DNA of 64,000 bases, taken from IMG/VR virus record IMGVR_UViG_3300030041_000009, positions 1 to 64,000 of that record, one strand, 5' to 3'. Of this stretch, positions 14,453 through 48,492 are shown piece after piece. The translations under genes and the position numbers were made by a program. The notes under the pieces were generated by a model. That model made no database searches. It was not told the DNA's origin and was given only the letters and a program-made list of their open reading frames with translations. Position 1 is the stretch's first letter; each line of letters begins with the position of its first letter.

Positions 14453-15747
14453 AGTGGACTAAGGAAATGTTGCAGGAAGAAGCAAACAAATATACAAATA
14501 GAATGGAATTTAGAGAAAATAGCAAAGCGGCTTACAGATATTCATATAGAAATCATATAATGAATGAATTATTCGAAAAACATATAAATAAAGGATATAT
14601 TATAACATGGACTAAAAAAAAATTAAAATATACCAACAAGCAGTTACAAGAAGAGGCTAATAAGTATTTTACTCGTGGAGAATTTATTAAAAATAATAAA
14701 CCTGCGTATCAATATTCATGTAGCAAAAATATGATAGATGATTTGTTTAAAAATCATAAAAATAATGGATATTATATAAAATGGACTGATGAAAAATTAC
14801 AAGAAGAGTCTAATAAATATTGTACTAGATGTGAATTTCAACAAAAATCGAATGGTGCATATTTATCTGCAGTTAGAAGAAATCTGATGGATGATTTATT
14901 TAAAAATCATAATAATAATGGATATTCAGATAAATACTCTAAAAATTATATTTATTTTGTTTATGTTTATGAATTGATAGATTATAATAAAGCTTATATT
15001 GGATTGACTATTAATATTGATAGAAGAGACAAAGAGCACGTATTTGATCAAAATGAAAAATTAAATAAATTTTGTAAAGAATCTAATATTTCATATCCAA
15101 AATATAAAATATTAGATTCTAATTTAAATTCAATAGATGCTAAAGAAGCTGAAATATTTTGGATTGATTATTATAAACAAAATAATTGGAAATTATTTAA
15201 TATTGCGAAAGGAGGTTCTTTAGGTGGCAAACCTTTTAAATGGACCGAAAATAAATTAATAAAATACGTTAAAAAATATAAAACTAGAGGAGATTTTTGT
15301 AATGATAACGAATCTGCATATAATTCTGCAAATAGATTAAAAATAATGGACAAATTATTCGAAAATCATATAAATAGTGGTTATACTAATAGACAAGTTA
15401 AAGAAGGATATTGGACGAAAGAAAAAATACAAGAAGAAGCTAACAAATATAATACTATAATGCAATTTAGAAAAGAATGTAGTAAAGCATATCATGCGGC
15501 AAGTAATTTAAAAATAATTGATGAATTATTTAAAAATCATATTAATCAAGGCAGGACAGCAAAGCATAAATATTATTGGACAACAGAAAGATTACAAGAA
15601 GAAGCTAACAAATATAAAACAAGAAATGATTTTAGAAAAAATGATATAAACTCTTATAGTTATTCTAAAACTAAAAAAATATTAAATGAATTATTTAAAA
15701 ATCATATAAATCAAGGATATATTCAAAAACAAAAAAAGTCAGAATAA
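14449..15747 (+). CDS. GIY-YIG homing endonuclease flanked by six helical repeats
   Basis: VYVY...YIGLT...RRDKEH...E...N; WTxEKLQEEANKY repeats on both sides. Confidence 0.8.
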   Translation: MKWTKEMLQEEANKYTNRMEFRENSKAAYRYSYRNHIMNELFEKHINKGYIITWTKKKLKYTNKQLQEEANKYFTRGEFIKNNKPAYQYSCSKNMIDDLFKNHKNNGYYIKWTDEKLQEESNKYCTRCEFQQKSNGAYLSAVRRNLMDDLFKNHNNNGYSDKYSKNYIYFVYVYELIDYNKAYIGLTINIDRRDKEHVFDQNEKLNKFCKESNISYPKYKILDSNLNSIDAKEAEIFWIDYYKQNNWKLFNIAKGGSLGGKPFKWTENKLIKYVKKYKTRGDFCNDNESAYNSANRLKIMDKLFENHINSGYTNRQVKEGYWTKEKIQEEANKYNTIMQFRKECSKAYHAASNLKIIDELFKNHINQGRTAKHKYYWTTERLQEEANKYKTRNDFRKNDINSYSYSKTKKILNELFKNHINQGYIQKQKKSE

Positions 15748-15783
15748 TTATTCTGACTTTTTGTTTTTGAATTATTTTAAAAA

Positions 15784-17658: not shown

Positions 17659-18230
17659 TTACTTTAATTTTTTTTTTGAATTATTAATTTTTTTTAATTT
17701 TAATTTTCTATATTCTTTTAGTGATATGAATCTTTTAACATCTAATGAAAATGAACTATTACCAAATTCTTCAAATGATAAATTTATATATATGTAATCT
17801 AAATTACCAAAAGTTTTATAATAATCTGTTGTAAAATAATCATTATCTGATGAATACCACACTCTTCTGACTGTTAATATATCATATTTTTTAATATTAA
17901 TATTATCTTTTTCAAATAATTTATTATTTTTTAAAAGTTTCAAATAATCATCAAATGAAAATATATTATAATCTACAATTACTACTTTATCTCCTGATTT
18001 AAACACAACTTTTCAAGTTTTAATTTTCTATATTCTTTTAGTGATATGAATCTGTCTGCTCTGAAATTTCCTCCTATATTAATTAATTTTATATATTGAT
18101 TAAGCATATAATAATGACCATAACTTTCTATTTTATACGTAGAATATTTTTTCAAATTCTTATATGGTTCAAATGTTTTAGTATCATTACTATCATCAAT
18201 ACAAACTATTATATTTCCTTCTTTAAACAT
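17659..18230 (-). CDS. Two small FKxGD (KOW/SH3-like) proteins with an identical RFISLKEYRKLKL tail
   Basis: ORFs 17659-18006 and 17982-18230 share about 35 bp of identical DNA at the tail. Confidence 0.7.
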
Positions 18231-20062: not shown

Positions 20063-22420
20063 TTAAAATGTTTCACTAATTTCTTTCAATTTATTTTTTC
20101 TTTCAATTCTTTTACTAATAAAAAATGTTTTAATAATTATATAGCAATCAACGTTAACATCAGTCATTATTAATATAGAACTATTTTTTTCATCTTCATA
20201 AATGTTTAATATTCTATATTCTTTACCTACTGTTATTAATAAATCATTTGTATTATCATTTTTTATACAAATAGCTAATTCTCCAACTTTAAATTTGTTG
20301 TTTGATTTCATTTATTTTCATTTTTCTAAGTTTTTGTTTACTAATGAAATAAGATTCAGGTACAAAAAAATTATAATTATTATTACATATCATATACATA
20401 TTACTTGAATTACAATTACTTAATTGAAGTACTTTATATTCGTTATTTATTGTCAATAATAGTTCAGTAAAAGTATCATTTTTTATACAAATAACTAATT
20501 CACCAACTTTAAATTTGTTTTTTGATTTCATTTATTTTCATTTTTCTAAGTTCTTTTTTACTAGCAAAACAGGATTTAGGTACAAAATAATTAATATTTA
20601 TATCGCATGTTACGCATATATTATCAGTATTAAATATTCCCATTGCTGATATTTTATATTCTTTATTTATTGTCAATATATTTGAATATTCAAAGGTTTT
20701 TATACAAACAATGGTATCATTTGTTTTGAACATATTTATTTAGTTTTTCAAGTTTAAATTTTCTTAAATCTTTTAAATTCTTTTTATTTATAAAATATGA
20801 ATCAGGTAACGGCATTATAAGATTATTATCGCATATTATATTTAAATATCCGCTATTTTTATATATCCATAATATTTTATATTCTTTATCTACTGTTATT
20901 AATTGATTGCTATTTTTTATACAAATAGCATAATCATCAATTTCAAATTTATTATTTTTAACTAATTTCATTTAGTTTATTTAATTTTAATTTTCTATAT
21001 CCTTTTACACTTATAAATCTCGTCATATCATAAACTGAATATCCATATTTATTTTCAATTTCATCTAATATATATGAAGTGCTTTCATATCGACTACTAG
21101 TATCATCAAGTGATTCATAACAATTTCCATCATCTCCCCAATATGATAGAATTTTTTTAATTGTGTAAGTTTTATTTATTTCTAATGGATTTATTTTATG
21201 AAATTCTAACATATATGATACGAAATCATAAAAAACATAATCTTGTTTAGGTTCATTATCTATACAAACAACTACATCACCTATTTTGTACATATTTATT
21301 TAGTTTTTTTAATTTTAATTTTCTGATTGATTTAATATCAGTAAAAAAACTTATTGGTACAAATTGGCTGAATTTTTTAGTGTCACTTTTTACTACAATT
21401 TTATTTTGAAAATACCAATCAATATATTCAATTTTATATTTTTTACCTATTGTTAAATGTTGATCCCAATAATCATTATCATCAATTTTTACACAAGTGA
21501 CAATTTGGCCAATTTTAAAATCATAATTTGTCAATTCATTTTCTTTCATTTAGTTTATTTAGTTTAACTTTTCTTAAAATTAAAATTAATTGATTTTCGG
21601 GTAAAGATAATAATCTAAATCTCATATTTGTATTCACTATATGATTATAATGAATAGTTACAACATAATTATCATTATTACAATCATATCTTATTTCACG
21701 TATATAAAAATCACTGTCTGGTATTTGTTCATCATAATATTTTTTCAGTTCTCTTAATAACAATAAATATGATTTGGTATCTAAGTTTGAAACTATATTG
21801 GTTGGCATAATTTATTTAGTTTATTTAGTTTATTTATTCTGGATATATTATTTAATTTGCATTCAGATAAATAATGATGTTCAGTAGTATAAAAATATCC
21901 TGATAATCTATATTTTTTTCTCATTTTAACAGAAATAACATACTCAGAATTATTATGATAACTTTTTCTAAATCCTGATATATCATATACAGTATATTTA
22001 AAATTATCATTTAGTATATTTGAATAATATATTTTTAATTCTTTGAGTAAATTTTCATATGATTGCGTATTTTCTTTATATTTATACATTATTAATTTTT
22101 TCTAATTTTTGTTTTCTTAAAAAAATATTATGTTCTTTATCATCATTAAATTGATATAATATATCATTAACTACTTCATATTTAGAGTATGTAATAACAA
22201 ATGGCAAATAATCATCAAATTTAATATAGAAAGAATATTCACTTGACATAAAAATTGAAAAACTTAAATTAAATTTCTCAGTCATTGCAATTATTGCGCC
22301 AGATCTAATTAATTCATTTTTTTCATTCAATTGAATATATTTATCCATAGAATAACAGTTTTTAGGCATACCCCATAACCCGTTATCTTGTTTTTTAGAA
22401 TTTATTTTTATTATTTGCAT
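20063..22420 (-). CDS. Tandem array of nine small overlapping ORFs, all ending in the RxxK[LI]xx[LI] tag
   Basis: ORFs at 20063, 20289, 20509, 20717, 20958, 21277, 21536, 21793 and 22082; the first six are [FY]KxG[DE]-xxCI paralogues; near-identical junction DNA at about 20282-20332 and 20502-20552. Confidence 0.75.
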
Positions 22421-22428
22421 AATACTGA

Positions 22429-22932
22429 TTATAAATTGCCTAATTTACTTACTTCGTCATTTAATTTAGTTCCAAGTGATTCTAAATTTATCATTTGCTT
22501 TTTTATTTGTTCTATACTATTATTAAATTCTTCTTTAATATCTTCTTCAGATATATCTTCGCTTGTCATTAGTTCATCAAATTTTTTAAATAATTCTTGA
22601 CTTTCTATATTATTTGATACAAATTCGAATGAATCATAATCTATATTTTGATCAATTTGATATTCATTTTCAGTTATTTTTTTATCTATGGTAAGTATAT
22701 CATTTTTCCTTTTATCTGAAAATTCTTTAAAGTTAAAAACATATTCTTCATTTTTAAGAGGACACCATTCTGCAGTGTAAAAACTAACATTATCATTAAA
22801 ATTAATAAAATATTCATCATTTTTTAAAAATTTTGATAGTATACATTCACTTATTGGTTCATCTCCTGATTCATAATAATATTCAGTATTACAAAATGGA
22901 CAATTTCCACAGCAATTTACGGTTTTTTTCAT
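22429..22932 (-). CDS. CxxCPFC zinc-finger plus coiled-coil protein
   Basis: CCGNCPFC...C...WCPL. Confidence 0.6.
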   Translation of the reverse strand: MKKTVNCCGNCPFCNTEYYYESGDEPISECILSKFLKNDEYFINFNDNVSFYTAEWCPLKNEEYVFNFKEFSDKRKNDILTIDKKITENEYQIDQNIDYDSFEFVSNNIESQELFKKFDELMTSEDISEEDIKEEFNNSIEQIKKQMINLESLGTKLNDEVSKLGNL

Positions 22933-23093
22933 TTTAAATTATTTATTTTTTCGATTTTTTCTTTTCTTTTCTTATTGAGTTCTTTTCTTTTAATTTCTCT
23001 CATAAATTCGTCATCAAATATAATATGTTTAGGATATAAGTTTGCATAATCCATATTTACTATCTGATATTCAAATTTATAATTTTTCTTCAT
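22929..23093 (-). CDS. 54 aa mini-protein: PolB motif A-like segment plus tag
   Basis: Own translation: MKKNYKFEYQIVNMDYANLYPKHIIFDDEFMREIKRKELNKKRKEKIEKINNLK. Confidence 0.6.
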   Translation of the reverse strand: MKKNYKFEYQIVNMDYANLYPKHIIFDDEFMREIKRKELNKKRKEKIEKINNLK

Positions 23094-23846: not shown

Positions 23847-25879
23847 ATGATGAGAGCAATATGTAAGCTAGATTACGGACAGTTTGAAAATAACAAAACC
23901 TACAATTATTCATGCACTAACGACAATAAATTCCACGTTGATGGTCAATATGGAAAAACAGAATTTAATAAAAGACAATTTAATGCATTATTTACATTAG
24001 AAAGAACAAAAAACCCAAACAAATCATTTAATTTTTAATATCTAATTTATGAAATTTAATATCGGAGATAATGTTATATTCATAAATAATTCTAAAACTA
24101 TTTATGCTTGGGATCTTGTTGATTATAAAATCTATAAAATTGAGAATTTTTCAATTCGTTCGTCTGAATTTATGTATTCGGTGAGTGATAATGATAGTAA
24201 TACAACTCAAAGTTGGTATTTTGAATGTGATTTTATTTCATTGCAAGAATATAGAAAAATTAAATTAAACGAAATAAAACAATTATCATGAGAAGATTTA
24301 GTAAAAAATTAAAAAATATATTTAATTCTATTAATCCATATTACGAAATTAATAAAGAATCCGATAGATTTCAAGAACTCAGAATAAAATTGAATGAAAA
24401 TCGATTAGATTATATAATAAAAGAGTTTGAAAGAATAGAAAATATGAGTGATGAAGAAAGAATAGAATATAAAAAAAATTTATTGAAAGAAGAAGCAAAT
24501 AATATAATTGATAAATTAGAATCAAATTCAGAATTATATAAAGAATATAATAATATTATGAGGAGAAAGAAAATTAAAAAATTAGAAAGTAATGAGTAAT
24601 TTAGTAGAACATGCAAAAAGAGAATTTCTTAAATTAGGTTATAAACCAATTGATAAATGCGAAAATGATCCAAATAAATGGATACAAGAAAATATATTAG
24701 AATTACTTGAAATATTTTCTAAACAAGGTCATTCTGGATTTTCAGCATCATATGTACTTAGTTATTTTAATAAATTGGCTAATTTTGAACCAATTGCTCC
24801 GATTATGTGTACCGATGATGAATGGAATGATATAGCAGATGAATGTTATCAAAATAATCGTTGTTCTGCAGTATTTAAAGAAAAAATTGATAGTAATCCA
24901 TATTATTTGGATGCTATTATTTTTGTTGATGAAAATAATTCATCTTTTACTGGTAGAGCATATAATAATAGTCATGATAGTATAACAAGTAGGCAAACAA
25001 TTAAATTACCATTTACACCTAAACGTTTTTATGTTGATGTAGTTTATTATAATGATGAAAATCATATTAAAGATGAATCCCAATTAAAAGAAGTTTGGAA
25101 ATATTATGAGCATCAAGAAACTAAGTCATATATTAGATTACAAAAATTAAAATCAATAGAATGAAAATTGGAGATGTTCAAGTTTATTTAGGAGATACTA
25201 ATATGTATTATACTAAAAATAAAAAATATTATGTATATAGGATAAATTCTCATTTTATACCTGGAACTATTTGTGGACATATAATGAATGATATAGGAGA
25301 TAGTGTTTATTTTCGTGATGATGATATCGACAGGAATTGGATAGATTTAAAAAAATATAGAAAAGAAAAAATTAATAATTTAAATAATATTTATGAAAAA
25401 AACTTTGAATGATTTTGATTATAGTTTTAAATTTCCTGATAATGATTTTAATAATTTATCGTTAGAAATGCTACAAAAATGGAAAACATTAATCAATCAA
25501 GATAAAATAAAATTAAAAAAAGAAGAAAGAATTGCTAAATTAAATGAAATAAATTCTAAATAAAATGACAATACAAAATTATAAGAAAAAATATTTAATA
25601 TGTAAAGATGATTTTGGTAAAAATATTTATGTTGGAGATACTGTGGAATTATTTTGTCCACTTGAATTTTCAACTACATGGAAATCAATTGTTTATTGGA
25701 GTATGTTATCTGGAGCGTGGGTAGATTTTCCTACTATATTTATTGATACTCCAAATCCTCAAAGAATTTTATATTCATTACTTAATCAGCAAGAATATAA
25801 TATTTGTGATGTAGATAGTGATATTCCAATAAAATATAAAGGATATTGTAAAAAAATAAAATCTTTTTATACAAAATAA
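23847..25879 (+). CDS. Run of small ORFs (23847, 24049, 24288, 24592, 25161, 25393, 25565); five carry the C-terminal tag
   Basis: Tails YRKIKLNEI, RRKKIKKL, RLQKLKSI, RKEKINNL, RIAKLNEI. Confidence 0.65.
25393..25563 (+). CDS. 56 aa mini-protein: LxKWxxLI segment plus tag
   Basis: Own translation: MKKTLNDFDYSFKFPDNDFNNLSLEMLQKWKTLINQDKIKLKKEERIAKLNEINSK. Confidence 0.55.
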   Translation: MKKTLNDFDYSFKFPDNDFNNLSLEMLQKWKTLINQDKIKLKKEERIAKLNEINSK

Positions 25880-28508: not shown

Positions 28509-30001
28509 ATAGTTTCTAATTTCGATGAAAAACAATGAAATCAGTTTAAAATTAAGTTAATAATTTTTGGGGTAACTACAAACCCCTCTATTCCGTCAAT
28601 AAATATATTCGGAAATGCTTTTCTTAAAATGTTATAACTACCATTTACATCTGCGTTAATTATCACATTTGAATTTTTTATTTTATATAAACCTCTACTT
28701 TGACGATATCCACTGAATATTTTTTCGGTTTTGTCTCCGTAAACTGGTATTAAATCTAAATTCAAAAATGAAGATTTGCTAGTATAACTTTCTTCTTGTA
28801 ATATAACTCTTATTCCTTCTTTTTCGCACTTATACGATAACATCGATATAAATCTACTATGTGGAATCTGTATGAAATTCTGGTTGTTCTGTTTTGACAT
28901 GTTGCATTCTTGTTTCCAACCATCATTTTTACCAATAACTAATTTTGATATGTTATTGATAATTAATTCTTTAACTATTTGATTACTTGCTTTGTGTAGG
29001 TAATCATCTACTTTATTGTTTCGTTTATTTGTTAACTTCCTTATTCCTTTACTTGACTTCTTTTTATTAGTGATTTCAAGAACTGATTTCATTTCTGCTA
29101 AACGTTTATTGTAATATTGATTTGTAGATTTAAGTGGTCTACCATTAAAAATTAATGGTTGAAATCCTTTAATACTGGTCGTTAATGTCGCTAAATTATT
29201 TACACCTAAATCAATTGAAGCGTATCGTTTGTTGTCTCTGACTTGTTTCTTTTCATTATAGGTATAACACACTTCAATCACGTATTGATCAAGCCTTGGT
29301 ATTATCCGAACGCAATCTATTGAATTAATATCAGTTAACTTGGTATAGAATTCTATTTTAGTACCTGATAACTTGATTTTGTTTGTTTTCTTGAATACTT
29401 TTCTTGATATCGCTTGATAATTATATGAAATAATAAATCTTCCTTTAATCTTATGAAGAAATCCTGGTTGCTCTGGATAACTTTTATACTTTGATTTATT
29501 TTTACCATAATCTTTACATGAATTAAAGAAACTTTTGTAATTTCGTTGAACCTGAATGATAGTTCCAGTCGCAACTTTCATTGGTAATCTCTGAAAGCAC
29601 TCTTCAGACTTCATTACTTGATATAACTTATTTAAAGGATTATAATCAGTTGTTTCTAAACCTTGTCTGATTAAATAAACTGATCGATTATAGATGTTCT
29701 TTGATTTAAAACATAATTCATCACACTCTTTATAATTTGAATGTGATTTAGTAATTATATGTCTTTCCGTCAATTTCATGTATTAATACCTAATTTTAAT
29801 GTATATATTAATAAAAATATATTATTTATTTATATTTTATAGAAATTAAATCATTAAAAGTTTAAATTAATTTATTATTTTTATTTAACTATTTATTTTA
29901 ATTTATATGATAAATATTTACTATCTTAGTTTATTAAATCATTTGATGAAATAATTTCATTGAAATTCATTATTTTTCATTCATTTATATGAAGATTTTG
30001 A
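28509..30001 (-). mobile_element. Non-autonomous TnpB-only IS200/IS605/IS607-type element, about 1.49 kb
   Basis: Ends inferred from in-frame reconstitution at a shared TAT; TTCATTRTTTTTCAT inverted motifs near both ends; no tnpA. Confidence 0.75.
28541..29779 (-). CDS. tnpB: RNA-guided endonuclease TnpB
   Basis: SKNIYN, IDLGVNNL (RuvC-I), YLHKAS, EESYTSK, NADVNGSYNI (RuvC-III). Confidence 0.92.
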   Translation of the reverse strand: MKLTERHIITKSHSNYKECDELCFKSKNIYNRSVYLIRQGLETTDYNPLNKLYQVMKSEECFQRLPMKVATGTIIQVQRNYKSFFNSCKDYGKNKSKYKSYPEQPGFLHKIKGRFIISYNYQAISRKVFKKTNKIKLSGTKIEFYTKLTDINSIDCVRIIPRLDQYVIEVCYTYNEKKQVRDNKRYASIDLGVNNLATLTTSIKGFQPLIFNGRPLKSTNQYYNKRLAEMKSVLEITNKKKSSKGIRKLTNKRNNKVDDYLHKASNQIVKELIINNISKLVIGKNDGWKQECNMSKQNNQNFIQIPHSRFISMLSYKCEKEGIRVILQEESYTSKSSFLNLDLIPVYGDKTEKIFSGYRQSRGLYKIKNSNVIINADVNGSYNILRKAFPNIFIDGIEGFVVTPKIINLILN

Positions 30002-41265: not shown

Positions 41266-41360
41266 ATTATATTTTTTTCAAAGATAATAAAAAAAAATTG
41301 AATTACCTACTATTTTAAAAATATTTATATAAAAAAAGTCCCATAAAGAGACTTTTTAAT

Positions 41361-41432
41361 TTGAGCAAGTGGTCTGATTTGAACAGAATCCTTTAACTGG
41401 AAGCTAAACGCATTAACATATGCTACCACTGC
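41361..41432 (-). tRNA. tRNA-Gly(TCC)-like, atypical (copy 1)
   Basis: GCAGTGG...TTTAG-CTTCCAG-TTAAA...TCTG-TTCAAAT-CAGA-CCACTTGC-TCAA; bulged acceptor stem, 4 bp T stem. Confidence 0.7.
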
Positions 41433-41435
41433 ATT

Positions 41436-42293
41436 TTAATAATATCTATATTTTTCATTCATATTTCCTTGATCCTTAATAACTTCATTAATTATAGATA
41501 ATAACTTTTTTTTATTTTTAATACATTTATTTTTAAATATATTTTCCCATTTTTTAAAATAATCTATTAATGGTAAATTTGAATCTATAAAATCTAAATT
41601 GTAATTATTTTTAATAATTTGTTCATTTAAATGATTAATTAAAACTATTAACGCTGGCTCTGATATTTTTTCTAACATATAATTATAAAATTTTTCAGCA
41701 TTAAAACTATCCAATTCTTCATATTTTTTCCATGATTCACATTCTTTAATTTTTTCTAATAAAATATTTTTATCTATGCTATTAAATTTCATTAAAAAAT
41801 GATACGCTTCTGAAACTCTAGCGTTTAATTCATTATCCAAAGATAAATAAATAAAATATGTAAAATCATTTAAAGGTGTCTCGATTTTGTTAAAATTTGT
41901 TATAATTTTTTGTAAATTAACATGAGTAGGTAAATCTCTTTGATTCTTAACCAAATTATAAAATTCTAAAACATGAGTCAATTCATGAGATATTTTACTT
42001 TTTATGATGTAATCATCAGTTCCAATAGGAACAAAAAAGTATAAATTTATATTTTTTAATATATTATTTGAAAAAGTATAATTTATAGGATCAAATTTAG
42101 CATAACAATCTAATCTTTTTTCAAAATTAATAGTCAATTTAATATTATATAAAGGAAATAAAATATCTTTTAAATCTAAAAAAATAATCTTATCTTCATA
42201 GTCTAAAAAATTAGTATAAATAATATCAGAATATGTTTTAATAATGTTAGAAATACCATTACCTTCATTGATAAAATTTAAATACTTTTTCAT
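41436..42293 (-). CDS. HExxH metallopeptidase, paralogue 3
   Basis: MKKYLNFINEGNGIS; SHELTH...YLSLDNELNAR. Confidence 0.7.
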   Translation of the reverse strand: MKKYLNFINEGNGISNIIKTYSDIIYTNFLDYEDKIIFLDLKDILFPLYNIKLTINFEKRLDCYAKFDPINYTFSNNILKNINLYFFVPIGTDDYIIKSKISHELTHVLEFYNLVKNQRDLPTHVNLQKIITNFNKIETPLNDFTYFIYLSLDNELNARVSEAYHFLMKFNSIDKNILLEKIKECESWKKYEELDSFNAEKFYNYMLEKISEPALIVLINHLNEQIIKNNYNLDFIDSNLPLIDYFKKWENIFKNKCIKNKKKLLSIINEVIKDQGNMNEKYRYY

Positions 42294-43264
42294 ATTGGTA
42301 TATTAAAATTTTCATTTAATAAATTTTTAAAAAATATAGGATCATATAAATACATTCTATTAAAATCTTTATGAAATATTGCAGATGGTATCGATGAGAA
42401 CTCTAAATTACCCTCATTAATCCTATTATCAACACTTGATATTTTACTTTTTATATATTTTAACCTAATATCAAATAATTCTTTAAGATCAATTAAAAAT
42501 TTATCATTATTAGTTTCTTTCCATATAGATTTATTTAATTTCTTAATATATTTCTTATTTTTTGAATAATAATAAATACTCTGATATATTTTATCTTTTA
42601 ATAAATTTAATTCAATTTCTTCTATATTACTAAGCTTTTTTATATTAAATTTTTCAATATCTTTAATATTATCAAATATTTTATTGTATTTTTTACCAAT
42701 CTTACTAAAATAATAATATTGATGTATTTGAGCATCGATTTCATGACTTAAAGTTTTATATAATAATTCAATTATATTATTAATATAATCTGATTTAAAA
42801 TTGTTTCTAAATTGACTCAAAATAACTCCGATAGACCAAGAAGATGACCTAAATTTATTATTTTTAGAAATATTGTAATATTGAAAAATGTGTAAACATT
42901 CATGTAAAATGACAGAATCTATATAATCATTAAAATATATCTCATCTTTATCAGAAATATAAATATCTAAAACTATTTCAATATTAGATAAAATATCATT
43001 ACTCATTTTAGAGTTATTAAATCTAGCAACAGAGTTGCAAACATTTTCTTTATATTTATATAAATTAAATATTACTTTAATATTATCTAATTTTAAGTCA
43101 TTTTCAGATAATTCATAAGTAAACTCATTACTTAAATTAATATTATTAAAATTAATTAATATATTATGCAAATCTTTTGATATAGTCTCCTGTAAAATTT
43201 CACAAGAATCAGATATCGATTTTCTTTCTAATAAATATGTGTTGTAATTGTTTAAATAATCCAT
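42290..43264 (-). CDS. HExxH metallopeptidase, paralogue 4 (start MDYLNNY)
   Basis: LHECLH...YKTLSHEIDAQ; the longer track ORF extends into the tRNA. Confidence 0.7.
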   Translation of the reverse strand: MDYLNNYNTYLLERKSISDSCEILQETISKDLHNILINFNNINLSNEFTYELSENDLKLDNIKVIFNLYKYKENVCNSVARFNNSKMSNDILSNIEIVLDIYISDKDEIYFNDYIDSVILHECLHIFQYYNISKNNKFRSSSWSIGVILSQFRNNFKSDYINNIIELLYKTLSHEIDAQIHQYYYFSKIGKKYNKIFDNIKDIEKFNIKKLSNIEEIELNLLKDKIYQSIYYYSKNKKYIKKLNKSIWKETNNDKFLIDLKELFDIRLKYIKSKISSVDNRINEGNLEFSSIPSAIFHKDFNRMYLYDPIFFKNLLNENFNIPI

Positions 43265-43273
43265 AATATAAAT

Positions 43274-43345
43274 TTGAGCAAGTGGTCTGATTTGAACAGA
43301 ATCCTTTAACTGGAAGCTAAACGCATTAACATATGCTACCACTGC
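43274..43345 (-). tRNA. tRNA-Gly(TCC)-like (copy 2, identical)
   Basis: Inside the 88 bp perfect direct repeat 43271-43358 = 41358-41445. Confidence 0.7.
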
Positions 43346-43379
43346 ATTTTAATAATATAGTAATTAAATATTAAAAAGT

Positions 43380-43707: not shown

Positions 43708-45309
43708 TTATTTTTTTAAAGTATATATAAATTTTAAAAATCCAGAATCATATATGCGATATACCTTCCGTTCTAACATAATTTCATGCTCTGTTTTATT
43801 TATATCAAATCCTTCTGTTACTAATTTATTTTTACGAAAATTACATTTATTATGCCTAATATTATCAATAATATATTGATAATCTGGCTTAACTTTATCG
43901 ACAAAATCAAATCCTATTTTTTTATATAAATTAATTTGACTAAAACTTCTATCAAAATAACATACTATTTCTTTCGCACTATATTTATTTATAAAATAAT
44001 TTAATAACGTAATTTCACTATCAATAATATTAGTATTTATTTTATTACTAAAACTTATCATCTCATAATTATTATTCTTAATATTAAATGTCATTAAACT
44101 AATTAATTCATTACCTAAATATAAACCAATTTTTATATTAGATTTAATATATCCATGTATATCATTTTTTTCTAAATAACTTTTAATTAAATTTATATCT
44201 AAAACTTCTCTTATTTCACAATCTTTTGAATCAATTACGTTTTCAAAAATATTTAATTTACTTAATATTATAGATTTTATAATTTCATTATTATAAATCC
44301 AGTCATCTTCATAAATATGAATCAATTGAATGCCTTGTTTTTCACATTCTTCAGTTTTATTTAAATGATAATCTTTATCTTTATTTAATTCATTGTGCCA
44401 CCATAAACCATTAAATTCAAATGCTAATTTCAAATTAGGTAAATAAATATCTAATTCTAAAGGATTTAAAATTTTTCTATCATTCAAAATTATCTCATCA
44501 TTATAATTTTCTTTAATAAAACCTAATAATTGTAACTCTAACCCACTAACATTTTTTGAAATTGGATTGCATTCTGTACATAATATTGTTTTATTATTTA
44601 TCCTATTCCACAATAATTTATAATCAATATTAAAATGATGATCTTTATGTAAATCACATTTAAATTCATATTGACCATTTGATAAATATCCAACAAATAT
44701 ATCTTTTCTATCTCTAATAATTTCAGATTTATATAATCCTTTATCAAAATTTTTCTTAAAACTAATAAATTGATTTTCTCTCATTTTAATAGATATTTCT
44801 GCATTTTGACTAGCATATTCTACTCCATATCTTTCTAAATTCGTTGATTTCATTTTATATGGATTTGTATAGTTAGCATCTCCATATTTTTCTAATTTAC
44901 TTACATGTCCTTTTTTGTTAATTTCTTTAGATTGCTGAGGATATTCGACACCAAAATTTTTTAAACAAGTTTCTACTTTTTTATCTTTAATAATTTGAGA
45001 ATTTGAAACATTTTCTACTCCATATTTTTCTAAATTTGTATTTTTTGATTTTTGTTCAGAACATTTTCTACTACAAGCATAATATGTTGTTGAATTTTTT
45101 GTGTTATAATTATATCTACTATATGAAATAATAGTTTCTTCGCCACAAACATCACATTTTGCTTTAATTTTTGATACACTTCTTGTAGGTAAATCTATTG
45201 CAAGTATAGAAATAATTTCATTTCCTCCTTTTACTTCATACCCTTTTTCTTTATAATATTTAATTTGATTATTAGATATTTTTACATCGACATACTTTGT
45301 CAAAATCAT
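43708..45309 (-). CDS. Hef-like homing endonuclease (Vsr/PD-(D/E)xK type)
   Basis: CDVCG, KYGV repeats, ELDIYLP...AFEFNGLWWH...IHIYEDDW. Confidence 0.75.
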   Translation of the reverse strand: MILTKYVDVKISNNQIKYYKEKGYEVKGGNEIISILAIDLPTRSVSKIKAKCDVCGEETIISYSRYNYNTKNSTTYYACSRKCSEQKSKNTNLEKYGVENVSNSQIIKDKKVETCLKNFGVEYPQQSKEINKKGHVSKLEKYGDANYTNPYKMKSTNLERYGVEYASQNAEISIKMRENQFISFKKNFDKGLYKSEIIRDRKDIFVGYLSNGQYEFKCDLHKDHHFNIDYKLLWNRINNKTILCTECNPISKNVSGLELQLLGFIKENYNDEIILNDRKILNPLELDIYLPNLKLAFEFNGLWWHNELNKDKDYHLNKTEECEKQGIQLIHIYEDDWIYNNEIIKSIILSKLNIFENVIDSKDCEIREVLDINLIKSYLEKNDIHGYIKSNIKIGLYLGNELISLMTFNIKNNNYEMISFSNKINTNIIDSEITLLNYFINKYSAKEIVCYFDRSFSQINLYKKIGFDFVDKVKPDYQYIIDNIRHNKCNFRKNKLVTEGFDINKTEHEIMLERKVYRIYDSGFLKFIYTLKK

Positions 45310-45371: not shown

Positions 45372-46856
45372 TCATAAAGGAGTTCCCTCTAATTTTTTAA
45401 GCTCATTTTGTAATTTATCAAGTTCTTCATGTTTTTCCATCATCACGTTTTTCCACTTTTTTCTATCAGAATATACTTCTCTCATTACACTACTAACAAC
45501 TCCTTCCTCATTCTTAAATACTGATCCATTTAAAGTTATGATATCATCAGGCTCAATTGTTAATTGATGTCCATTAAATATGGAATAATCTTTACCTTTT
45601 ACTTTTTGACCTTTATATGAATCTGCAGATATGTTAAATTCTCTCATAGTAGTAGGATACAAGGAACTAAAGTCAAAACAGCATGTCCATTCTGCCATAC
45701 CTCTTACAGGTTCTTTAACCCATCCTCCTTTTATAGATTCAGTTTCAGTATCTCCGTATTCACTATCTTCATTTCTAACAAGAACAATATTTTTTTGATC
45801 TCTTAATTTTTCTCTTAAAATTCCTTCTGTTAATGCAAGAGTTGAAATTGCATCTTTAATCTTAATTTTACCCAATACAGCCATGCCATAAAGTATGTCT
45901 ACATATTTCATTTTTTTATGTATCTGTTGAACTAAGCAACTATCTACAGCATTATAGAATACAAATTTCTTATAGTCCTCTTTATGCAATTTTTTTAAAT
46001 CTCCATCGTAATTAATTTTCTTAATTTCTTTTCCTAGTAATTTTTCAGAAGCGAAATCTAAAGATAAACTTTCCTTTACTTTAACTGATTGATCCCATTT
46101 TTTAAATAATTCCATATAATCAACTATAACCCTATGCGCTGGCATTTCTGCGTAACTTGGATTAATAGCATTAGGAGGATTAAATGGTTTATTAAGTTTT
46201 TTTGTGAATGAGGCAACCTCAGGTTCAAGTCCAATTCTTCTTGCTCTTGCAACTAAATATGTCCAGTCATAATTAATGAAATTCCAACCAGTTATTACTG
46301 GCATTTTAGGAACTAATTTGTTAAAAAAACTATGAAGCATATCATATTCAGTTTTGTACTGAACATATTTAAATTTATAATTTGTTCCAAATTTTTGAAA
46401 ATGAGTATTGATATCATTACCAATTGATTCAATTTGTGCAGCATCTAAAAACTGAGTTCCAATTACCAACACTTTATCTTTATTTACTATTGATATTGTT
46501 TGTATCTCACCCTCAGCAAGTTGTGGTTGTGGTTTACCAGTATTAAGAATCTCGTTCTCAATATCAACGAAGAATATATCTGGTTCTGCATATGAATATA
46601 TTTCATCTCGTTCTTCTTTATCAAAACTATCTATGAAATCATAAATGGAATACCGATTTGGGTATTTTGTATAAATCTCTTTAACATTTTCTCCTGACCA
46701 TGTGACAAATCTACCACTTTTTTCTTTATCATCATCAGTAGTTTTTATAAATTTTGTTGGGCGACTCCAATTTTTATATTTTAGTTTGATCTGACCAGAA
46801 CTATCTATATATGAGATAATTAGGTTATTATTTTTATATTCAGTATCTACAATCAT
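45372..46856 (-). CDS. Family B DNA polymerase, N-terminal subunit only (exonuclease plus motif A)
   Basis: VDIE (ExoI), GWNFINYD (ExoII), YNAVD (ExoIII), GGWV, DFSSLYP; motifs B and C absent. Confidence 0.9.
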   Translation of the reverse strand: MIVDTEYKNNNLIISYIDSSGQIKLKYKNWSRPTKFIKTTDDDKEKSGRFVTWSGENVKEIYTKYPNRYSIYDFIDSFDKEERDEIYSYAEPDIFFVDIENEILNTGKPQPQLAEGEIQTISIVNKDKVLVIGTQFLDAAQIESIGNDINTHFQKFGTNYKFKYVQYKTEYDMLHSFFNKLVPKMPVITGWNFINYDWTYLVARARRIGLEPEVASFTKKLNKPFNPPNAINPSYAEMPAHRVIVDYMELFKKWDQSVKVKESLSLDFASEKLLGKEIKKINYDGDLKKLHKEDYKKFVFYNAVDSCLVQQIHKKMKYVDILYGMAVLGKIKIKDAISTLALTEGILREKLRDQKNIVLVRNEDSEYGDTETESIKGGWVKEPVRGMAEWTCCFDFSSLYPTTMREFNISADSYKGQKVKGKDYSIFNGHQLTIEPDDIITLNGSVFKNEEGVVSSVMREVYSDRKKWKNVMMEKHEELDKLQNELKKLEGTPL

Positions 46857-47277: not shown

Positions 47278-48492
47278 ATGAGAAAATTAACTACAAATGA
47301 ATTTATAGAAAAATCAAATGAGATACATAATAATAGATATGATTATTCAAATACTATTTATACTGGTTGTAAAAATGATGTCGAAATAATTTGTTCAATA
47401 CACGGAAAATTTACTCAAAATGCTCAATCTCATTTAAATGGGCATGAATGTACGAAATGTTCTGGTCATTATATATATTCTAAAATAGAATTTATTGAAA
47501 AAGCTAATATTGTACATAATAAATATGACTATAGTTTAACGAATTATATAAATAGTAGAAATAAGATTAAAATAATATGTCCGATTCACGGAGAATTTAT
47601 CATAAGGGCGAATAATCATTTACTTGGAATAGGATGTTCAAAATGTAGTGGAAAAAATAAAAATATATCTGAAATAATTGATGATTTTAATAAAATATAT
47701 GATTATAAATATGATTATAGTTTAGTTAATAATTATAAAGATAAACATTCTATAATTAAAATAATATGTCCAATTCACGGAGAATTCGAAAAAATTGCAT
47801 ATGCTCATAACAATGGTCACGGATGTCCAAAATGCGGCATAAATACATTATCTACTTCTAAATTTATAGAATTATCAAAATTAAATCATAATAATAAATA
47901 TGATTATAGTTTAGTTAAATATAATGGTGTTATGAATACTGTAAAAATAATATGTCCAATACATGGTATGTTTGAACAGATTAGTAGATTTCATTTAAAT
48001 GGTAGTGATTGTCCAAACTGTTCAGAATCTAAAGGTGAAAAAGAAATCAGAAATTATTTAGATAATAATAATATAACTGAGAATGAATTTAATAAATTAT
48101 TTAAAAAATATTATAAACAATGTTACATATATGATGCTTCTATAATGTTAGATAAATTTAATTTAAAAAATTTTAGTAGATTAAATTCTAATAATTTGGT
48201 TATATTTTTTAATGTTTTAAATGATAAAAAGAATTTATTGAAAATACATCAAAAAAGTGGAAAATTTAAAAAATTTTTATTAGATATTTATGATGTGTTA
48301 ACTAACCGTTATTTTAATGATTATTATTATAAAAAAATAGATAAGAGTATTAAAATAGAAAATTTGGATAATATATTAGAAATTTATGATAAAAGATTTA
48401 AGAATGCATCAAAAACTATTAAAAATAAGTTATCTAAATTATATAGTTTAATATTAGATGAATTAAAACATGAAAATTTAATAAAAAATTAA
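47278..48492 (+). CDS. Chimera: four C[PS]IHG zinc repeats (HEG type) fused to a metallopeptidase C-terminal domain
   Basis: C[PS]IHG..F...H..G..CxxC four times, SKGE, then about 140 aa matching the end of 49934-50866. Confidence 0.75.
   Translation: MRKLTTNEFIEKSNEIHNNRYDYSNTIYTGCKNDVEIICSIHGKFTQNAQSHLNGHECTKCSGHYIYSKIEFIEKANIVHNKYDYSLTNYINSRNKIKIICPIHGEFIIRANNHLLGIGCSKCSGKNKNISEIIDDFNKIYDYKYDYSLVNNYKDKHSIIKIICPIHGEFEKIAYAHNNGHGCPKCGINTLSTSKFIELSKLNHNNKYDYSLVKYNGVMNTVKIICPIHGMFEQISRFHLNGSDCPNCSESKGEKEIRNYLDNNNITENEFNKLFKKYYKQCYIYDASIMLDKFNLKNFSRLNSNNLVIFFNVLNDKKNLLKIHQKSGKFKKFLLDIYDVLTNRYFNDYYYKKIDKSIKIENLDNILEIYDKRFKNASKTIKNKLSKLYSLILDELKHENLIKN

What the first reader, a model, noticed from the sequence alone, without database searches (positions are those of the whole stretch)
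20063..22420. Tandem overlapping array built by recombination at tag-encoding DNA
Nine tagged genes overlap stop-to-start, so tag-coding DNA also forms the next gene's initiation region. Junctions are near-identical (about 20282-20332 vs 20502-20552; 20731-20749 vs 21291-21309), as are 17698-17733 vs 18018-18053. Inference: the tag DNA is a recombination handle for accordion-like cassette shuffling without an integrase.
Basis: partly seen in the sequence, partly recalled or inferred. Interest (0 to 1): 0.6.

Follow-up and report, generated by a model that had tools for sequence, protein, structure and literature searches.

The report
Tagged small-gene array in a megaphage
Nine overlapping small genes in a peat "megaphage" belong to a large, undescribed protein family that shares one C-terminal peptide tag; related strains have gained or lost whole genes at the tag DNA, but the tag looks like a conserved peptide that recombination happens to use, not a dedicated recombination site.

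Summary
Nine minus-strand ORFs (20063-22420) overlap by 8-23 nt, all end in an RKxKLxKL-type tail, and the quoted junction pairs are 49/51, 18/19 and 36/36 identical.

The window is part of a 256-kb fragment of a huge tailed phage. Its nearest published relative is the 735-kb Mahaphage. In this fragment 92 of 451 genes carry the tag 8-22 residues from their end, against 0.4 expected by chance.

The tag is a peptide: the last strand plus a basic C-terminal helix of an SH3/Tudor-like barrel. Its codon usage matches the genome background. In 61 of 91 tagged genes the next ATG lies 23-38 nt after the tag's Arg codon, so the A-rich tag DNA doubles as a Shine-Dalgarno-less initiation region.

Two related strains carry 6 genes and 5 genes plus one decayed cassette here instead of 9. 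The one deletion between unrelated genes has both breakpoints inside tag DNA. Shared genes keep their order, and near-identical contigs show a fixed array. Genome-wide, tag junctions are not clearly more indel-prone than other gene ends.

Verdict: a real multigene-family accordion. The "recombination handle" reading is partly supported, as a passive homology patch only.

The parts
22082..22420 (-). First array gene, 112 aa. The N-terminal part is unrelated to the SH3-like members. The tag runs from 22082 to 22138.
   Evidence: ORF and tag. Orthologues in strains B and C are 53-58% identical. In C its tag is fused to the tail of the missing 98-aa gene. The AF2 model was unusable, pLDDT 43.6.
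21793..22089 (-). 98-aa gene with a degenerate tag (R-I-N-K-L-N-K-L). This cassette is present in strains A and B and absent from strain C.
   Evidence: The 283-nt segment missing in C begins 15 nt before the stop of the 112-aa gene and ends 21 nt before the stop of this gene, so both ends lie in tag DNA.
21536..21808 (-). 90-aa tagged gene. Its N-terminal part resembles that of the 98-aa gene and is not SH3-like.
   Evidence: Orthologues are 93 aa in B and 95 aa in C.
21277..21549 (-). 90-aa tagged gene of the SH3-like barrel family.
   Evidence: Orthologues B89 and C89 are 66-73% identical.
20958..21293 (-). 111-aa tagged gene, an SH3-like barrel with an insertion.
   Evidence: The identical protein occurs on 16 contigs with the same gene order. 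In strain C a decayed extra cassette lies just upstream of its orthologue.
20717..20971 (-). 84-aa tagged SH3-like gene, present only in strain A.
   Evidence: It is 43% identical to the 82-aa gene and has no counterpart in B or C.
20509..20733 (-). 74-aa tagged SH3-like gene, present only in strain A.
   Evidence: Its last ~100 nt are 93-100% identical to those of the 80-aa gene, while the bodies are 50-60% identical.
20289..20531 (-). 80-aa tagged SH3-like gene, present only in strain A, with a mosaic structure. Its first ~70 nt, together with the tag DNA upstream of its start (~130 nt in all), match the 82-aa unit. Its last ~100 nt match the 74-aa gene. Its middle matches neither.
   Evidence: sliding identity; 20254-20373 vs 20474-20593, 120 nt at 90%.
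20063..20311 (-). Last array gene, 82 aa. It is the orthologue of the single B83/C85 gene. A 56-nt spacer and then RtcB follow.
   Evidence: 52-55% identical to B83 and C85. It carries the tag although no gene overlaps its end.
17982..18230 (-). 82-aa tagged SH3-like gene downstream of RtcB. Its post-tag tail (C-L-N-Q-E-I-K) is the other-frame reading of the next gene's start.
   Evidence: The same tail recurs in database members.
17659..18006 (-). 115-aa tagged gene with a GTG start, present only in strain A. It is an extra 320-nt cassette bounded by the tag repeat 17698-17733 / 18018-18053.
   Evidence: B and C have a single 77-aa gene here, and the alignment overlap of 48 nt is tag DNA.
22929..23093 (-). 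54-aa tagged ORF. Strains B and C carry a 217-219-aa tagged gene in the same interval between the 72-aa and 167-169-aa genes, but this ORF aligns with the tag end of that gene and the spacer downstream of it.
   Evidence: One breakpoint of the 647-nt difference lies 5 nt from the tag's Arg codon.
24049..24291 (+). 80-aa tagged SH3-like member on the other strand. This is the member that was modelled.
   Evidence: AF2 gave pLDDT 88.7: strands at 8-11, 28-37, 40-47, 53-58 and 62-64, and a helix at 65-79. The tag is therefore the last strand plus the C-terminal helix. Fold matches are only generic SH3/Tudor/chromo/KOW.

Best explanation
The array is one local cluster of a greatly expanded, undescribed multigene family in a huge tailed phage of the Mahaphage kind. 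The host probably belongs to the Bacteroidota.

The proteins are small (median 87 aa) and share a C-terminal peptide of about 20 residues: [YF]-x-x-x-x-F-[IY]-[ST]-x-[KQ]-E-x-R-K-x-K-L-x-K-[LI]. In the main subfamily this forms the last beta-strand and a basic C-terminal helix of an SH3/Tudor-like barrel. The same peptide also ends many proteins whose N-terminal parts show no detectable similarity to each other.

The genes are packed so that the next ATG sits just after the tag's second Leu. Two things follow. The A-rich tag codons act as the Shine-Dalgarno-less initiation region of the next gene. The residues after the tag are simply the next gene's start read in another frame.

The array grows and shrinks by gain, loss and duplication of whole cassettes. 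This happens through general recombination, driven by homology or microhomology, or through replication slippage between junctions. In gene-dense DNA without spacers, the conserved tag plus the next gene's start is the only homology shared by neighbouring genes. It is also the only place where a break leaves both genes intact.

The tag DNA is conserved because the peptide is conserved. It acts as a passive homology patch, not a dedicated recombination site.

Shown: the anatomy, the peptide-level conservation, the copy-number differences and the breakpoints.

Inferred: translational coupling, the recombination mechanism, and the peptide's function. My guess for the function is a constant basic docking helix on a diversified set of small binders used in host takeover or counter-defence. 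I hold that guess at about 0.3.
For: Genome identity:
- T4-type family B polymerase split by a homing endonuclease.
- UvsW-type helicase.
- Best match is the 735-kb uncultured phage LR756501, 54.6% over the polymerase half. That phage belongs to the Mahaphage clade, predicted to infect Bacteroidetes (PMC7162821).
- No Shine-Dalgarno motif (8 of 451 genes), with A enrichment at -9 to -15.

Family size:
- 92 of 451 genes are tagged.
- 51 genes in strain A and 40 in strain C match the profile, against 7, 2, 1 and 0 in four published genomes of 462-735 kb.
- 2,470 clusters in the 50%-identity library match, mostly 70-90 aa and full length.
- Overlapping arrays also occur in unrelated samples.

The tag is a peptide:
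- Codon usage equals the background, and Arg is encoded by three different codons.
- Synonymous identity is equal in tag and body.
- 30 of 91 tagged genes have no overlapping downstream gene.
- AF2 places the tag as strand 62-64 plus helix 65-79, with pLDDT above 90.
- After the tag is removed, the 92 proteins fall into 46 BLAST clusters.

Initiation region:
- Next-ATG spacing of 23-38 nt in 57 of 61 cases.
- Junction DNA is unstructured, with z-scores from -1.1 to +1.2.
- The tail is the next gene's start in another frame.

Accordion: 9, 6 and 5+1 genes in strains A, B and C, with tag-bounded events.
Against: - No recombination intermediate or within-population variant was seen. Near-identical contigs all show one fixed array. 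The only read-level evidence consists of short contig joints with sides of 34 nt or less, which are unreliable.
- The microhomology at the best-resolved breakpoint is only 7 nt. Selection on random breaks could therefore give the same picture.
- Gain versus loss is not polarised, because there is no outgroup with this array.
- The ~190-nt junction-centred stretch that is 93% or more identical, flanked by bodies 40-60% identical, points to a conversion-like exchange. Plain duplication does not explain it, so recombination at junctions may be more active than 'passive' implies.
- Translational coupling and the peptide's role are untested.
- Only about 36% of the genome is in hand.
Confidence: 0.6

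Rival explanations
1. The tag DNA is a selected recombination handle and hot spot. It actively drives accordion-like shuffling of cassettes, much as repeated regulatory cassettes are proposed to do in T4-type phages.
For: - Resolved cassette events end in tag DNA.
- Short high-identity repeats are enriched at tag junctions: 46 of 429 repeat pairs have both copies at tags, although DNA within 30 nt of a tag's Arg codon makes up only about 2% of the genome.
- A junction-centred ~190-nt stretch is 93% or more identical between neighbouring units whose bodies are 40-60% identical.
- The tag sits on 46 apparently unrelated N-terminal sequence clusters. This would be easy to explain if bodies are swapped between constant ends.
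Against: - There is no DNA-level constraint beyond the peptide.
- The order of shared cassettes is conserved in three strains.
- The array is fixed in 16 near-identical contigs.
- Tags are no clearer an indel site than other gene 3' ends: 9 of 29, against a 13-20% share of tagged genes.
- About 80% of indels between strains have nothing to do with tags.
Confidence: 0.12
2. Tags play no part in recombination. The family arose by ordinary tandem duplication and divergence. Breaks occur anywhere, and selection keeps only indels that leave neighbouring genes intact. In overlapping genes those indels necessarily map to the junction.
For: - 41 of 49 indel sites between strains lie at some gene boundary, whether tagged or not.
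- The best-resolved joint has only 7 nt of microhomology.
- Junction similarity is explained by conserved peptides plus codon bias.
Against: - The deletion between the unrelated 112-aa and 98-aa genes is exactly in frame and rebuilds a full tag.
- A 1.9-kb segment with an opposite-strand methylase gene is bounded by two tags in direct orientation.
- The decayed cassette in strain C keeps 47/50-identical tag/start flanks.
- The junction-centred mosaic needs an exchange between junctions.
Confidence: 0.17
3. The 'tag' is mainly a nucleic-acid signal: an A-rich, unstructured leader for Shine-Dalgarno-less initiation or termination-reinitiation of the next gene. The conserved peptide is a by-product of that signal.
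For: - 61 of 91 tagged genes are overlapped by the next gene, with a nearly fixed ATG spacing.
- 53 of 91 tagged genes overlap the next gene by 8 nt or more, against 33 of 359 untagged genes.
- No Shine-Dalgarno motif and A enrichment upstream of all genes.
- Junctions are unstructured.
Against: - 30 of 91 tags have no overlapping downstream gene, including 7 followed by a gene on the opposite strand.
- Arg is kept through AGA, CGA and CGT. Leu/Ile positions vary in codon but not in residue class.
- Conserved Phe at -7 and Glu at -2 lie further upstream than the A-rich window.
- The tag is modelled with high confidence as a strand plus a helix of the fold.
Confidence: 0.08
4. A site-specific cassette system of the integron type. 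Tags would contain a recombination site read by an unrecognised recombinase encoded elsewhere in the roughly 700-kb genome.
For: - Cassette-sized, tag-bounded presence/absence differences.
- Only about 36% of the genome was available to search.
Against: - No tyrosine recombinase in the 256 kb.
- Junction DNA has no hairpin or inverted-repeat potential.
- No constant crossover core. Joints lie at different positions in tag and start.
- Tag DNA varies freely at synonymous sites.
Confidence: 0.03

Closest known systems
PeSL-mediated modular shuffling in T4-type phages (Arbiol et al. 2010, PMC2839356; Comeau et al. 2014, PMC4122927)
   Same: - Small genes of unknown function in variable regions of a phage with T4-type replication genes differ between close relatives.
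- The differing cassette is bounded by two copies of a short conserved sequence.
- The strain that lacks the cassette holds one chimeric copy of that sequence (for the published model; here).
- No integrase is invoked.
   Different: - PeSLs are intergenic regulatory cassettes of about 100 bp, made of a sigma-70-type promoter and a stem-loop terminator.
- Here the repeat is coding DNA: the C-terminal peptide of one gene overlapping the start of the next. It has no hairpin and no promoter excess.
- Mini-circles were shown for PeSLs. No such form was seen here.
Genomic accordions and multigene families of large DNA viruses, such as poxvirus gene amplification and the terminal paralogue families of giant viruses (from my own knowledge, not checked in the paper library)
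   Same: - Tandem paralogue arrays whose copy number differs between close relatives.
- Fast-diverging bodies (23% aa identity), consistent with an arms-race family.
   Different: - This is a tailed phage, not a eukaryotic virus.
- Units are 220-340 nt, overlap each other, and include non-homologous cassettes that share only the tag.
- No experimental amplification under selection has been shown.
Integron gene cassettes
   Same: - An ordered, same-strand array of short promoterless cassettes, with presence/absence variation at cassette boundaries.
   Different: - No attC-like hairpin.
- No integrase found.
- The boundary lies inside coding sequence.
SH3 / Tudor / chromo / KOW small beta-barrels
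   Same: - The modelled member has five strands forming a barrel followed by a C-terminal helix, as in chromo and PWWP domains.
   Different: - Only generic fold similarity: Foldseek E about 0.02 and VIA-align Z of 7.8 or less.
- No sequence match to PDB chains.
- For the window's own tagged genes, no Pfam match reaches its curated cut-off and PHROG matches are weak, E 0.004 or above.
- The conserved basic C-terminal motif is not a feature of those families.

Membership tests
PeSL regulatory cassettes (T4-type phages) | Intergenic location between small ORFs | tested here: not met
   The repeat lies inside coding DNA, and neighbouring genes overlap by 8-23 nt.
PeSL regulatory cassettes (T4-type phages) | Strong sigma-70-like early promoter in the element | tested here: not met
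   80 promoter-like sites were found in 15.5-25.5 kb, against 99.7 +/- 9.7 in shuffles, and none is positioned consistently at junctions. This is a consensus scan only.
PeSL regulatory cassettes (T4-type phages) | Stem-loop terminator in the element | tested here: not met
   Eight junctions folded at -0.9 to -4 kcal/mol, with z-scores from -1.1 to +1.2. No terminator-like site was found in the array.
PeSL regulatory cassettes (T4-type phages) | Flanks cassettes that differ between close relatives, with one chimeric element at the empty site | tested here: met
   The 98-aa cassette, the 115-aa cassette, the decayed cassette in strain C and the 1.9-kb methylase segment all fit.
Integron cassette array | attC-type imperfect inverted repeat at each cassette end | tested here: not met
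   No secondary-structure potential at the junctions.
Integron cassette array | Adjacent tyrosine-recombinase integrase | tested here: inconclusive
   PF00589 is absent from the 256-kb record, and the control genomes rang. However, the record is only about 36% of the genome.
Tandem multigene-family accordion | Copy number of tandem paralogues differs between related genomes | tested here: met
   9 vs 6 vs 5+1 genes upstream of RtcB. 14 vs 12 copies in the second array. Further tagged-gene gains and losses appear.
Tandem multigene-family accordion | Variation within a population or on short time scales | tested here: not met
   Sixteen contigs at 99.9% identity or more share one structure. The contig-level read layout was uninformative.
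Mahaphage-clade huge phage | Closest relatives by a replication hallmark gene are Mahaphage genomes, and genome size is several hundred kb | tested here: met
   The PolB half is 54.6% identical to LR756501 (735 kb) and 41.5-43% identical to the 634-642-kb genomes. An identical protein is also seen on a 346-kb contig. CheckV estimates 36% completeness at 256 kb. No phylogeny was made.
SH3/Tudor-like small beta-barrel fold | Five-stranded barrel recovered by structure comparison | tested here: met
   AF2 pLDDT 88.7. Z 7-7.8 to KOW, Tudor, PetP and chromo domains over residues 1-65. This shows the fold only, not membership of any sequence family.

The most novel reading that the evidence does not exclude
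A portable C-terminal strand-plus-basic-helix tag marks about a fifth of the genes of a lineage of roughly 700-kb megaphages for one common fate, meaning docking to a single hub. That hub could be a packaging or injection route, or a host target. On this reading the tag's coding DNA does three jobs at once. It encodes the peptide. It serves as the Shine-Dalgarno-less start region of the next gene. It provides an in-frame homology patch that lets unrelated gene bodies be gained, lost or swapped between constant ends. That would make it a coding-sequence counterpart of PeSL or integron cassettes.
Probability: 0.2. Interest if true: 0.75.

Novelty: new variant of a known kind. Interest (0 to 1): 0.55.

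Why it matters
Huge phages carry hundreds of small genes of unknown function, and it is unclear how they acquire and turn them over.

Here, one recognisable peptide tag labels about 20% of the genes in the fragment. It defines a family of more than 2,000 sequence clusters. The window's own members have no Pfam, PHROG or PDB match worth the name, and short tag strings were not found in the paper library.

This gives a handle for sorting megaphage 'dark matter'. It gives a testable case of one stretch of DNA serving both as protein code and as a start region in a host group that lacks Shine-Dalgarno sites. It also gives a natural example of whole-gene gain and loss in spacer-free DNA.

If the tag docks all these proteins to one partner, finding that partner would assign a role to dozens of genes at once.

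Tried and rejected
- **Giant eukaryotic virus.** I considered this first because of 22% GC, DnaK, AsnB and the CheckV size estimate. I rejected it. There is no NCLDV capsid, VLTF3 or RNA polymerase (the capsid search had no positive control). The polymerase and UvsW are T4-type. The nearest relatives are Mahaphages. The Atlas neighbours are Uroviricota. T4 gp23 and portal searches found nothing, but their controls did not ring either.
- **Family scans.** Pfam and PHROG scans of the nine proteins gave nothing above threshold.
- **Word-index protein search.** It found only the query protein itself.
- **tblastn of a consensus-like member** against 50,697 phage records: no match.
- **PDB sequence search** with the family profile: none.
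- **Rfam** on 15-26 kb: none.
- **Paper-library search** for three short tag strings: no paper.
- **Read layout** (one call, 5,901 letters, within the operators' limit). The runs are held only as short contigs. Seven joints were listed, several ending at tag junctions, but their sides are 22-34 nt. At that length they may come from other tagged loci or from related phages. I treat this as inconclusive.
- **Homodimer prediction** for the 80-aa member: 'no answer'. This is evidence neither way.
- **AF2 of the 112-aa non-SH3 member** from three orthologues: pLDDT 43.6, unusable. Whether the tag is helical outside the SH3-like subfamily therefore remains untested.
- **Concerted evolution of tag DNA** in the 14-copy array. 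Rejected, because synonymous identity in the tag equals that in the body.
- **Other points.** No other genetic code was used.
Full report
**1. The observation**

The minus strand of 20063-22420 holds nine ATG-started ORFs of 112, 98, 90, 90, 111, 84, 74, 80 and 82 aa. Each overlaps the next. From 20063 upwards the overlaps are 23, 23, 17, 14, 17, 14, 16 and 8 nt.

All nine end in a basic, leucine-spaced tail. Eight fit R[KR]x[KR][LIMFV]xx[LIMFV]. The 98-aa gene has a degenerate version.

**2. What genome this is**

The window is the first 64 kb of a 256,033-bp IMG/VR virus record with 22% GC. CheckV estimates it as 36% complete.

I first suspected a giant eukaryotic virus. No NCLDV capsid, VLTF3 or RNA polymerase is present. 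The evidence points to a huge tailed phage instead:
- The family B polymerase is T4-type and is split by a homing endonuclease.
- A UvsW-type helicase is present.
- The best polymerase matches are the 735-kb, 642-kb, 636-kb and 635-kb uncultured phages of Al-Shayeb et al..
- Those genomes form the Mahaphage clade and are predicted to infect Bacteroidetes (PMC7162821).

The DNA comes from peat metagenomes. Only 8 of 451 genes have a Shine-Dalgarno-like motif, and the region -9 to -15 is 60-69% A. From established knowledge, this matches the leader type of Bacteroidota.

**3. The tag is a genome-wide feature**

In the whole record the motif occurs 98 times in 451 genes. Ninety-two of those lie 8-22 residues from the C-terminus. 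Shuffled proteomes give 0.4.

The aligned logo spans about 20 residues. Phe is conserved at -7, Ile/Tyr at -6, Thr/Ser at -5 and Glu at -2. Then come an invariant Arg, Lys, x, Lys, Leu, x, Lys, Leu/Ile, followed by 3-9 further residues.

Tagged proteins are small, with a median of 87 aa. They lie singly or in runs of up to 10 by the strict motif. The longest array, at 121.7-125.6 kb, has 14 family copies.

With the tag removed, the proteins fall into 46 BLAST clusters. One has 37 members, and 37 are singletons.

**4. The tag is a peptide, not a DNA signal**

- Codon usage at every conserved tag position equals the genome background. Arg is AGA 86%, CGA 8% and CGT 4%. Leu uses four to five codons.
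- In the 14-copy array at 121.7-125.6 kb and its 12-copy counterpart in strain C, amino-acid identity is 0.7 in the N-terminal motif and in the tag, but 0.23 in the body.
- In the same arrays, the chance that two identical residues use the same codon is equal in tag and body: 0.85 vs 0.865 in A, and 0.77 vs 0.745 in C.
- The near-identity of junction DNA therefore follows from two conserved peptide motifs and an extreme AT codon bias.
- Thirty of 91 tagged genes have no overlapping downstream gene.

An AlphaFold model of the 80-aa member at 24049-24291 (18-sequence alignment, pLDDT 88.7) is a five-stranded small barrel. The 'F-I-S' part of the tag is the last strand (62-64). The rest is a C-terminal helix (65-79).

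Structure searches give only generic SH3, Tudor, chromo, KOW and PetP matches.

**5. The tag DNA is also the next gene's start region**

Fifty-three of 91 tagged genes overlap the next gene by 8 nt or more. Only 33 of 359 untagged genes do.

In 57 of the 61 overlapping cases the next ATG starts 23-38 nt after the first base of the Arg codon, most often at +25. That is directly after the tag's second Leu.

The junctions have no secondary structure. No promoter or terminator excess lies in the array.

As a consequence, the residues after the tag are the next gene's start read in another frame. At 17982-18006 the tail C-L-N-Q-E-I-K is the other-frame reading of the start F-K-S-G-D-K of the following gene. 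The same tails recur in many database members. This shows that overlapping arrays are typical of the family.

**6. How widespread the family is**

A profile of 18 members finds 2,470 clusters in the 50%-identity library. Most are 70-90 aa and match over the full length, tag included.

Three members that I looked up lie in similar overlapping arrays. One comes from the same peat sample series. Two come from samples under other accessions, whose habitat I did not check.

Profile hits per genome:
- 51 in strain A and 40 in strain C.
- 7, 2, 1 (partial) and 0 in published genomes of 642, 635, 735 and 462 kb.

The family is therefore strongly expanded in this lineage. The window's own members have no Pfam or PHROG match worth the name and no PDB match. 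The tblastn query found nothing in deposited phage records. Short tag strings were not found in the paper library.

**7. Does the array vary among relatives?**

Sixteen contigs from different samples and assemblers carry the identical 111-aa protein. The four that were read are at least 99.9% identical and have the same gene order. At that distance the array is fixed.

Two more distant strains were found through RtcB:

| Strain | RtcB identity to A | Contigs | Genes upstream of RtcB |
|---|---|---|---|
| A (window) | 100% | 16 or more | 9 |
| B | 92% | 4 | 6 |
| C | 94% | 2 | 5 plus one decayed cassette |

Shared genes are in the same order. The 84-, 74- and 80-aa genes are unique to A. The 82-aa gene is the orthologue of the single B83/C85 gene, at 52-55% identity.

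**8. Where the breakpoints lie**

- **The 98-aa gene, absent in C.** The missing 283 nt start 15 nt before the stop of the 112-aa gene and end 21 nt before the stop of the 98-aa gene. The 112-aa protein of C ends in a chimeric tag. The joint lies in a 7-nt microhomology. The two gene bodies are unrelated, so this event can only be placed in tag DNA.
- **The 115-aa gene at 17659-18006, only in A.** The alignment overlap of 48 nt is tag DNA.
- **A 228-nt decayed cassette in C**, between the 89-aa and 112-aa genes. It is bounded by 50-nt tag/start repeats that are 47/50 identical.
- **The three extra genes of A.** Their breakpoints cannot be placed more precisely than a 113-nt stretch made of tag plus N-terminal motif.
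- **A 1.9-kb tag-to-tag segment elsewhere in the genome.** It contains an opposite-strand Eco57I-like methylase gene and one tagged gene, and is absent from C.
- **Other differences.** Several further tagged genes are present in only one strain.

**9. Limits of the recombination reading**

A whole-genome comparison of A and C gives 49 simple indels of 150 nt or more.
- Nine have their empty site within 60 nt of a tag's Arg codon. That zone is 4.3% of the genome, giving binomial P = 2e-4.
- However, 41 of the 49 lie within 40 nt of some gene boundary, and 29 lie at a gene 3' end.
- Nine tagged among those 29 is at most a 1.5-2-fold excess over the 13-20% share of tagged genes.

Tag junctions are thus not clearly hotter than other gene ends. 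Most indels have nothing to do with tags, and no reordering of cassettes was seen.

One pattern does point to real exchange between junctions. The upstream tag plus the first ~70 nt of the 80-aa unit (about 130 nt) are 93-100% identical to the 82-aa unit. The last ~100 nt of the 80-aa gene are 93-100% identical to the 74-aa gene. The bodies are 40-60% identical. Plain duplication with divergence does not explain this mosaic. A conversion-like event, or the import of a new body between constant ends, does.

**10. Conclusion**

The finding is a real and rather striking gene arrangement.

The inference is right in a weak sense. In these spacer-free arrays, cassettes are gained and lost with joints in tag or start DNA, and no integrase is evident.

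The inference is not supported in the strong sense. The tag DNA shows no sign of being maintained as a recombination site, cassettes are not shuffled, and tags are not a demonstrated hot spot.

The closest published idea is PeSL-mediated modular shuffling in T4-type phages (PMC2839356). The logic of flanking repeats and a chimeric empty site matches. PeSLs, however, are intergenic promoter-terminator elements, and those features were tested here and are absent.

**11. Function of the peptide (inference only)**

The family combines a constant basic helix face (Arg 0, Lys +1, +3, +6) with hypervariable barrels, and it is greatly expanded in one lineage. This fits a diversified family of small binders that share one docking surface, as expected for host-takeover or counter-defence genes.

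A homodimer prediction gave no answer. A model of a non-SH3 member was unusable. Read-level data were uninformative. I hold this functional guess at about 0.3.

- Read laying was given 5,901 letters.
- No alternative genetic code was named.

Noticed in passing
window 41358-41445 and 43271-43358: A perfect 88-nt direct repeat (100% identity). The copies lie at the 3' end of the 285-aa ORF (41436-42293) and the 5' end of the 350-aa ORF (42290-43342), next to the homing-endonuclease gene that splits the DNA polymerase. It could be a trace of a mobile-element insertion or a duplication.
   Followed up: no
window 43708-45309, beside 45372-46856: The T4-type family B DNA polymerase is split. Only its N-terminal half lies at 45372-46856 (exonuclease domain and start of the polymerase domain). 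It is followed by a 533-aa homing/HNH endonuclease gene. A second HNH endonuclease gene lies at 47278-48492.
   Followed up: partly
window 28541-29779: A TnpB/OrfB_IS605-type gene with a Cas12f-like TNB domain lies inside the phage genome.
   Followed up: no
L028 6385-8873 (strain C): The RtcB gene of strain C is interrupted by about 1.1 kb carrying a 261-aa ORF. RtcB is therefore read as pieces of 184 and 240 aa. Strains A and B have it intact. It may be an intron or a mobile insertion.
   Followed up: no
G000 128469-130930 (outside the window): A tandem repeat of about 2.4 kb with a period near 66 nt and about 74% identity between copies. It probably encodes a repetitive protein.
   Followed up: no
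G000 189609-191435 (L094): A 1.9-kb segment absent from strain C carries an Eco57I-like N6-adenine methyltransferase gene on the opposite strand plus one tagged gene. It is bounded by two tags in direct orientation.
   Followed up: partly
proteins P0016, P0025, P0088 (database members): Some relatives are in-frame fusions of two cassettes (150-164 aa). In P0025 the first tag is cut short and runs straight into the next cassette's start motif. Junction indels can therefore also create two-domain proteins.
   Followed up: no
protein P0002 (database member): A 7,545-aa protein matches the barrel part of the profile 127 times, covering query positions 3-58 and not the tag. Its source and nature are unknown.
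   Followed up: no
window 17659-18006: The 115-aa tagged gene has no ATG and would start at GTG. The same base change is synonymous in the overlapping tail of the upstream gene.
   Followed up: partly
whole record G000: Genes almost entirely lack Shine-Dalgarno motifs: 8 of 451, which is below the random expectation of 6.4%. G is depleted to 2-7% and A enriched upstream of start codons. Stop-codon usage is TAA 208, TGA 65 and TAG 6.
   Followed up: partly
window 15733-15762: A 13-bp perfect hairpin with T runs on both sides lies between the convergent DnaK gene and the 432-aa gene. It looks like a bidirectional terminator and is the only strong one in 15.5-25.5 kb.
   Followed up: no
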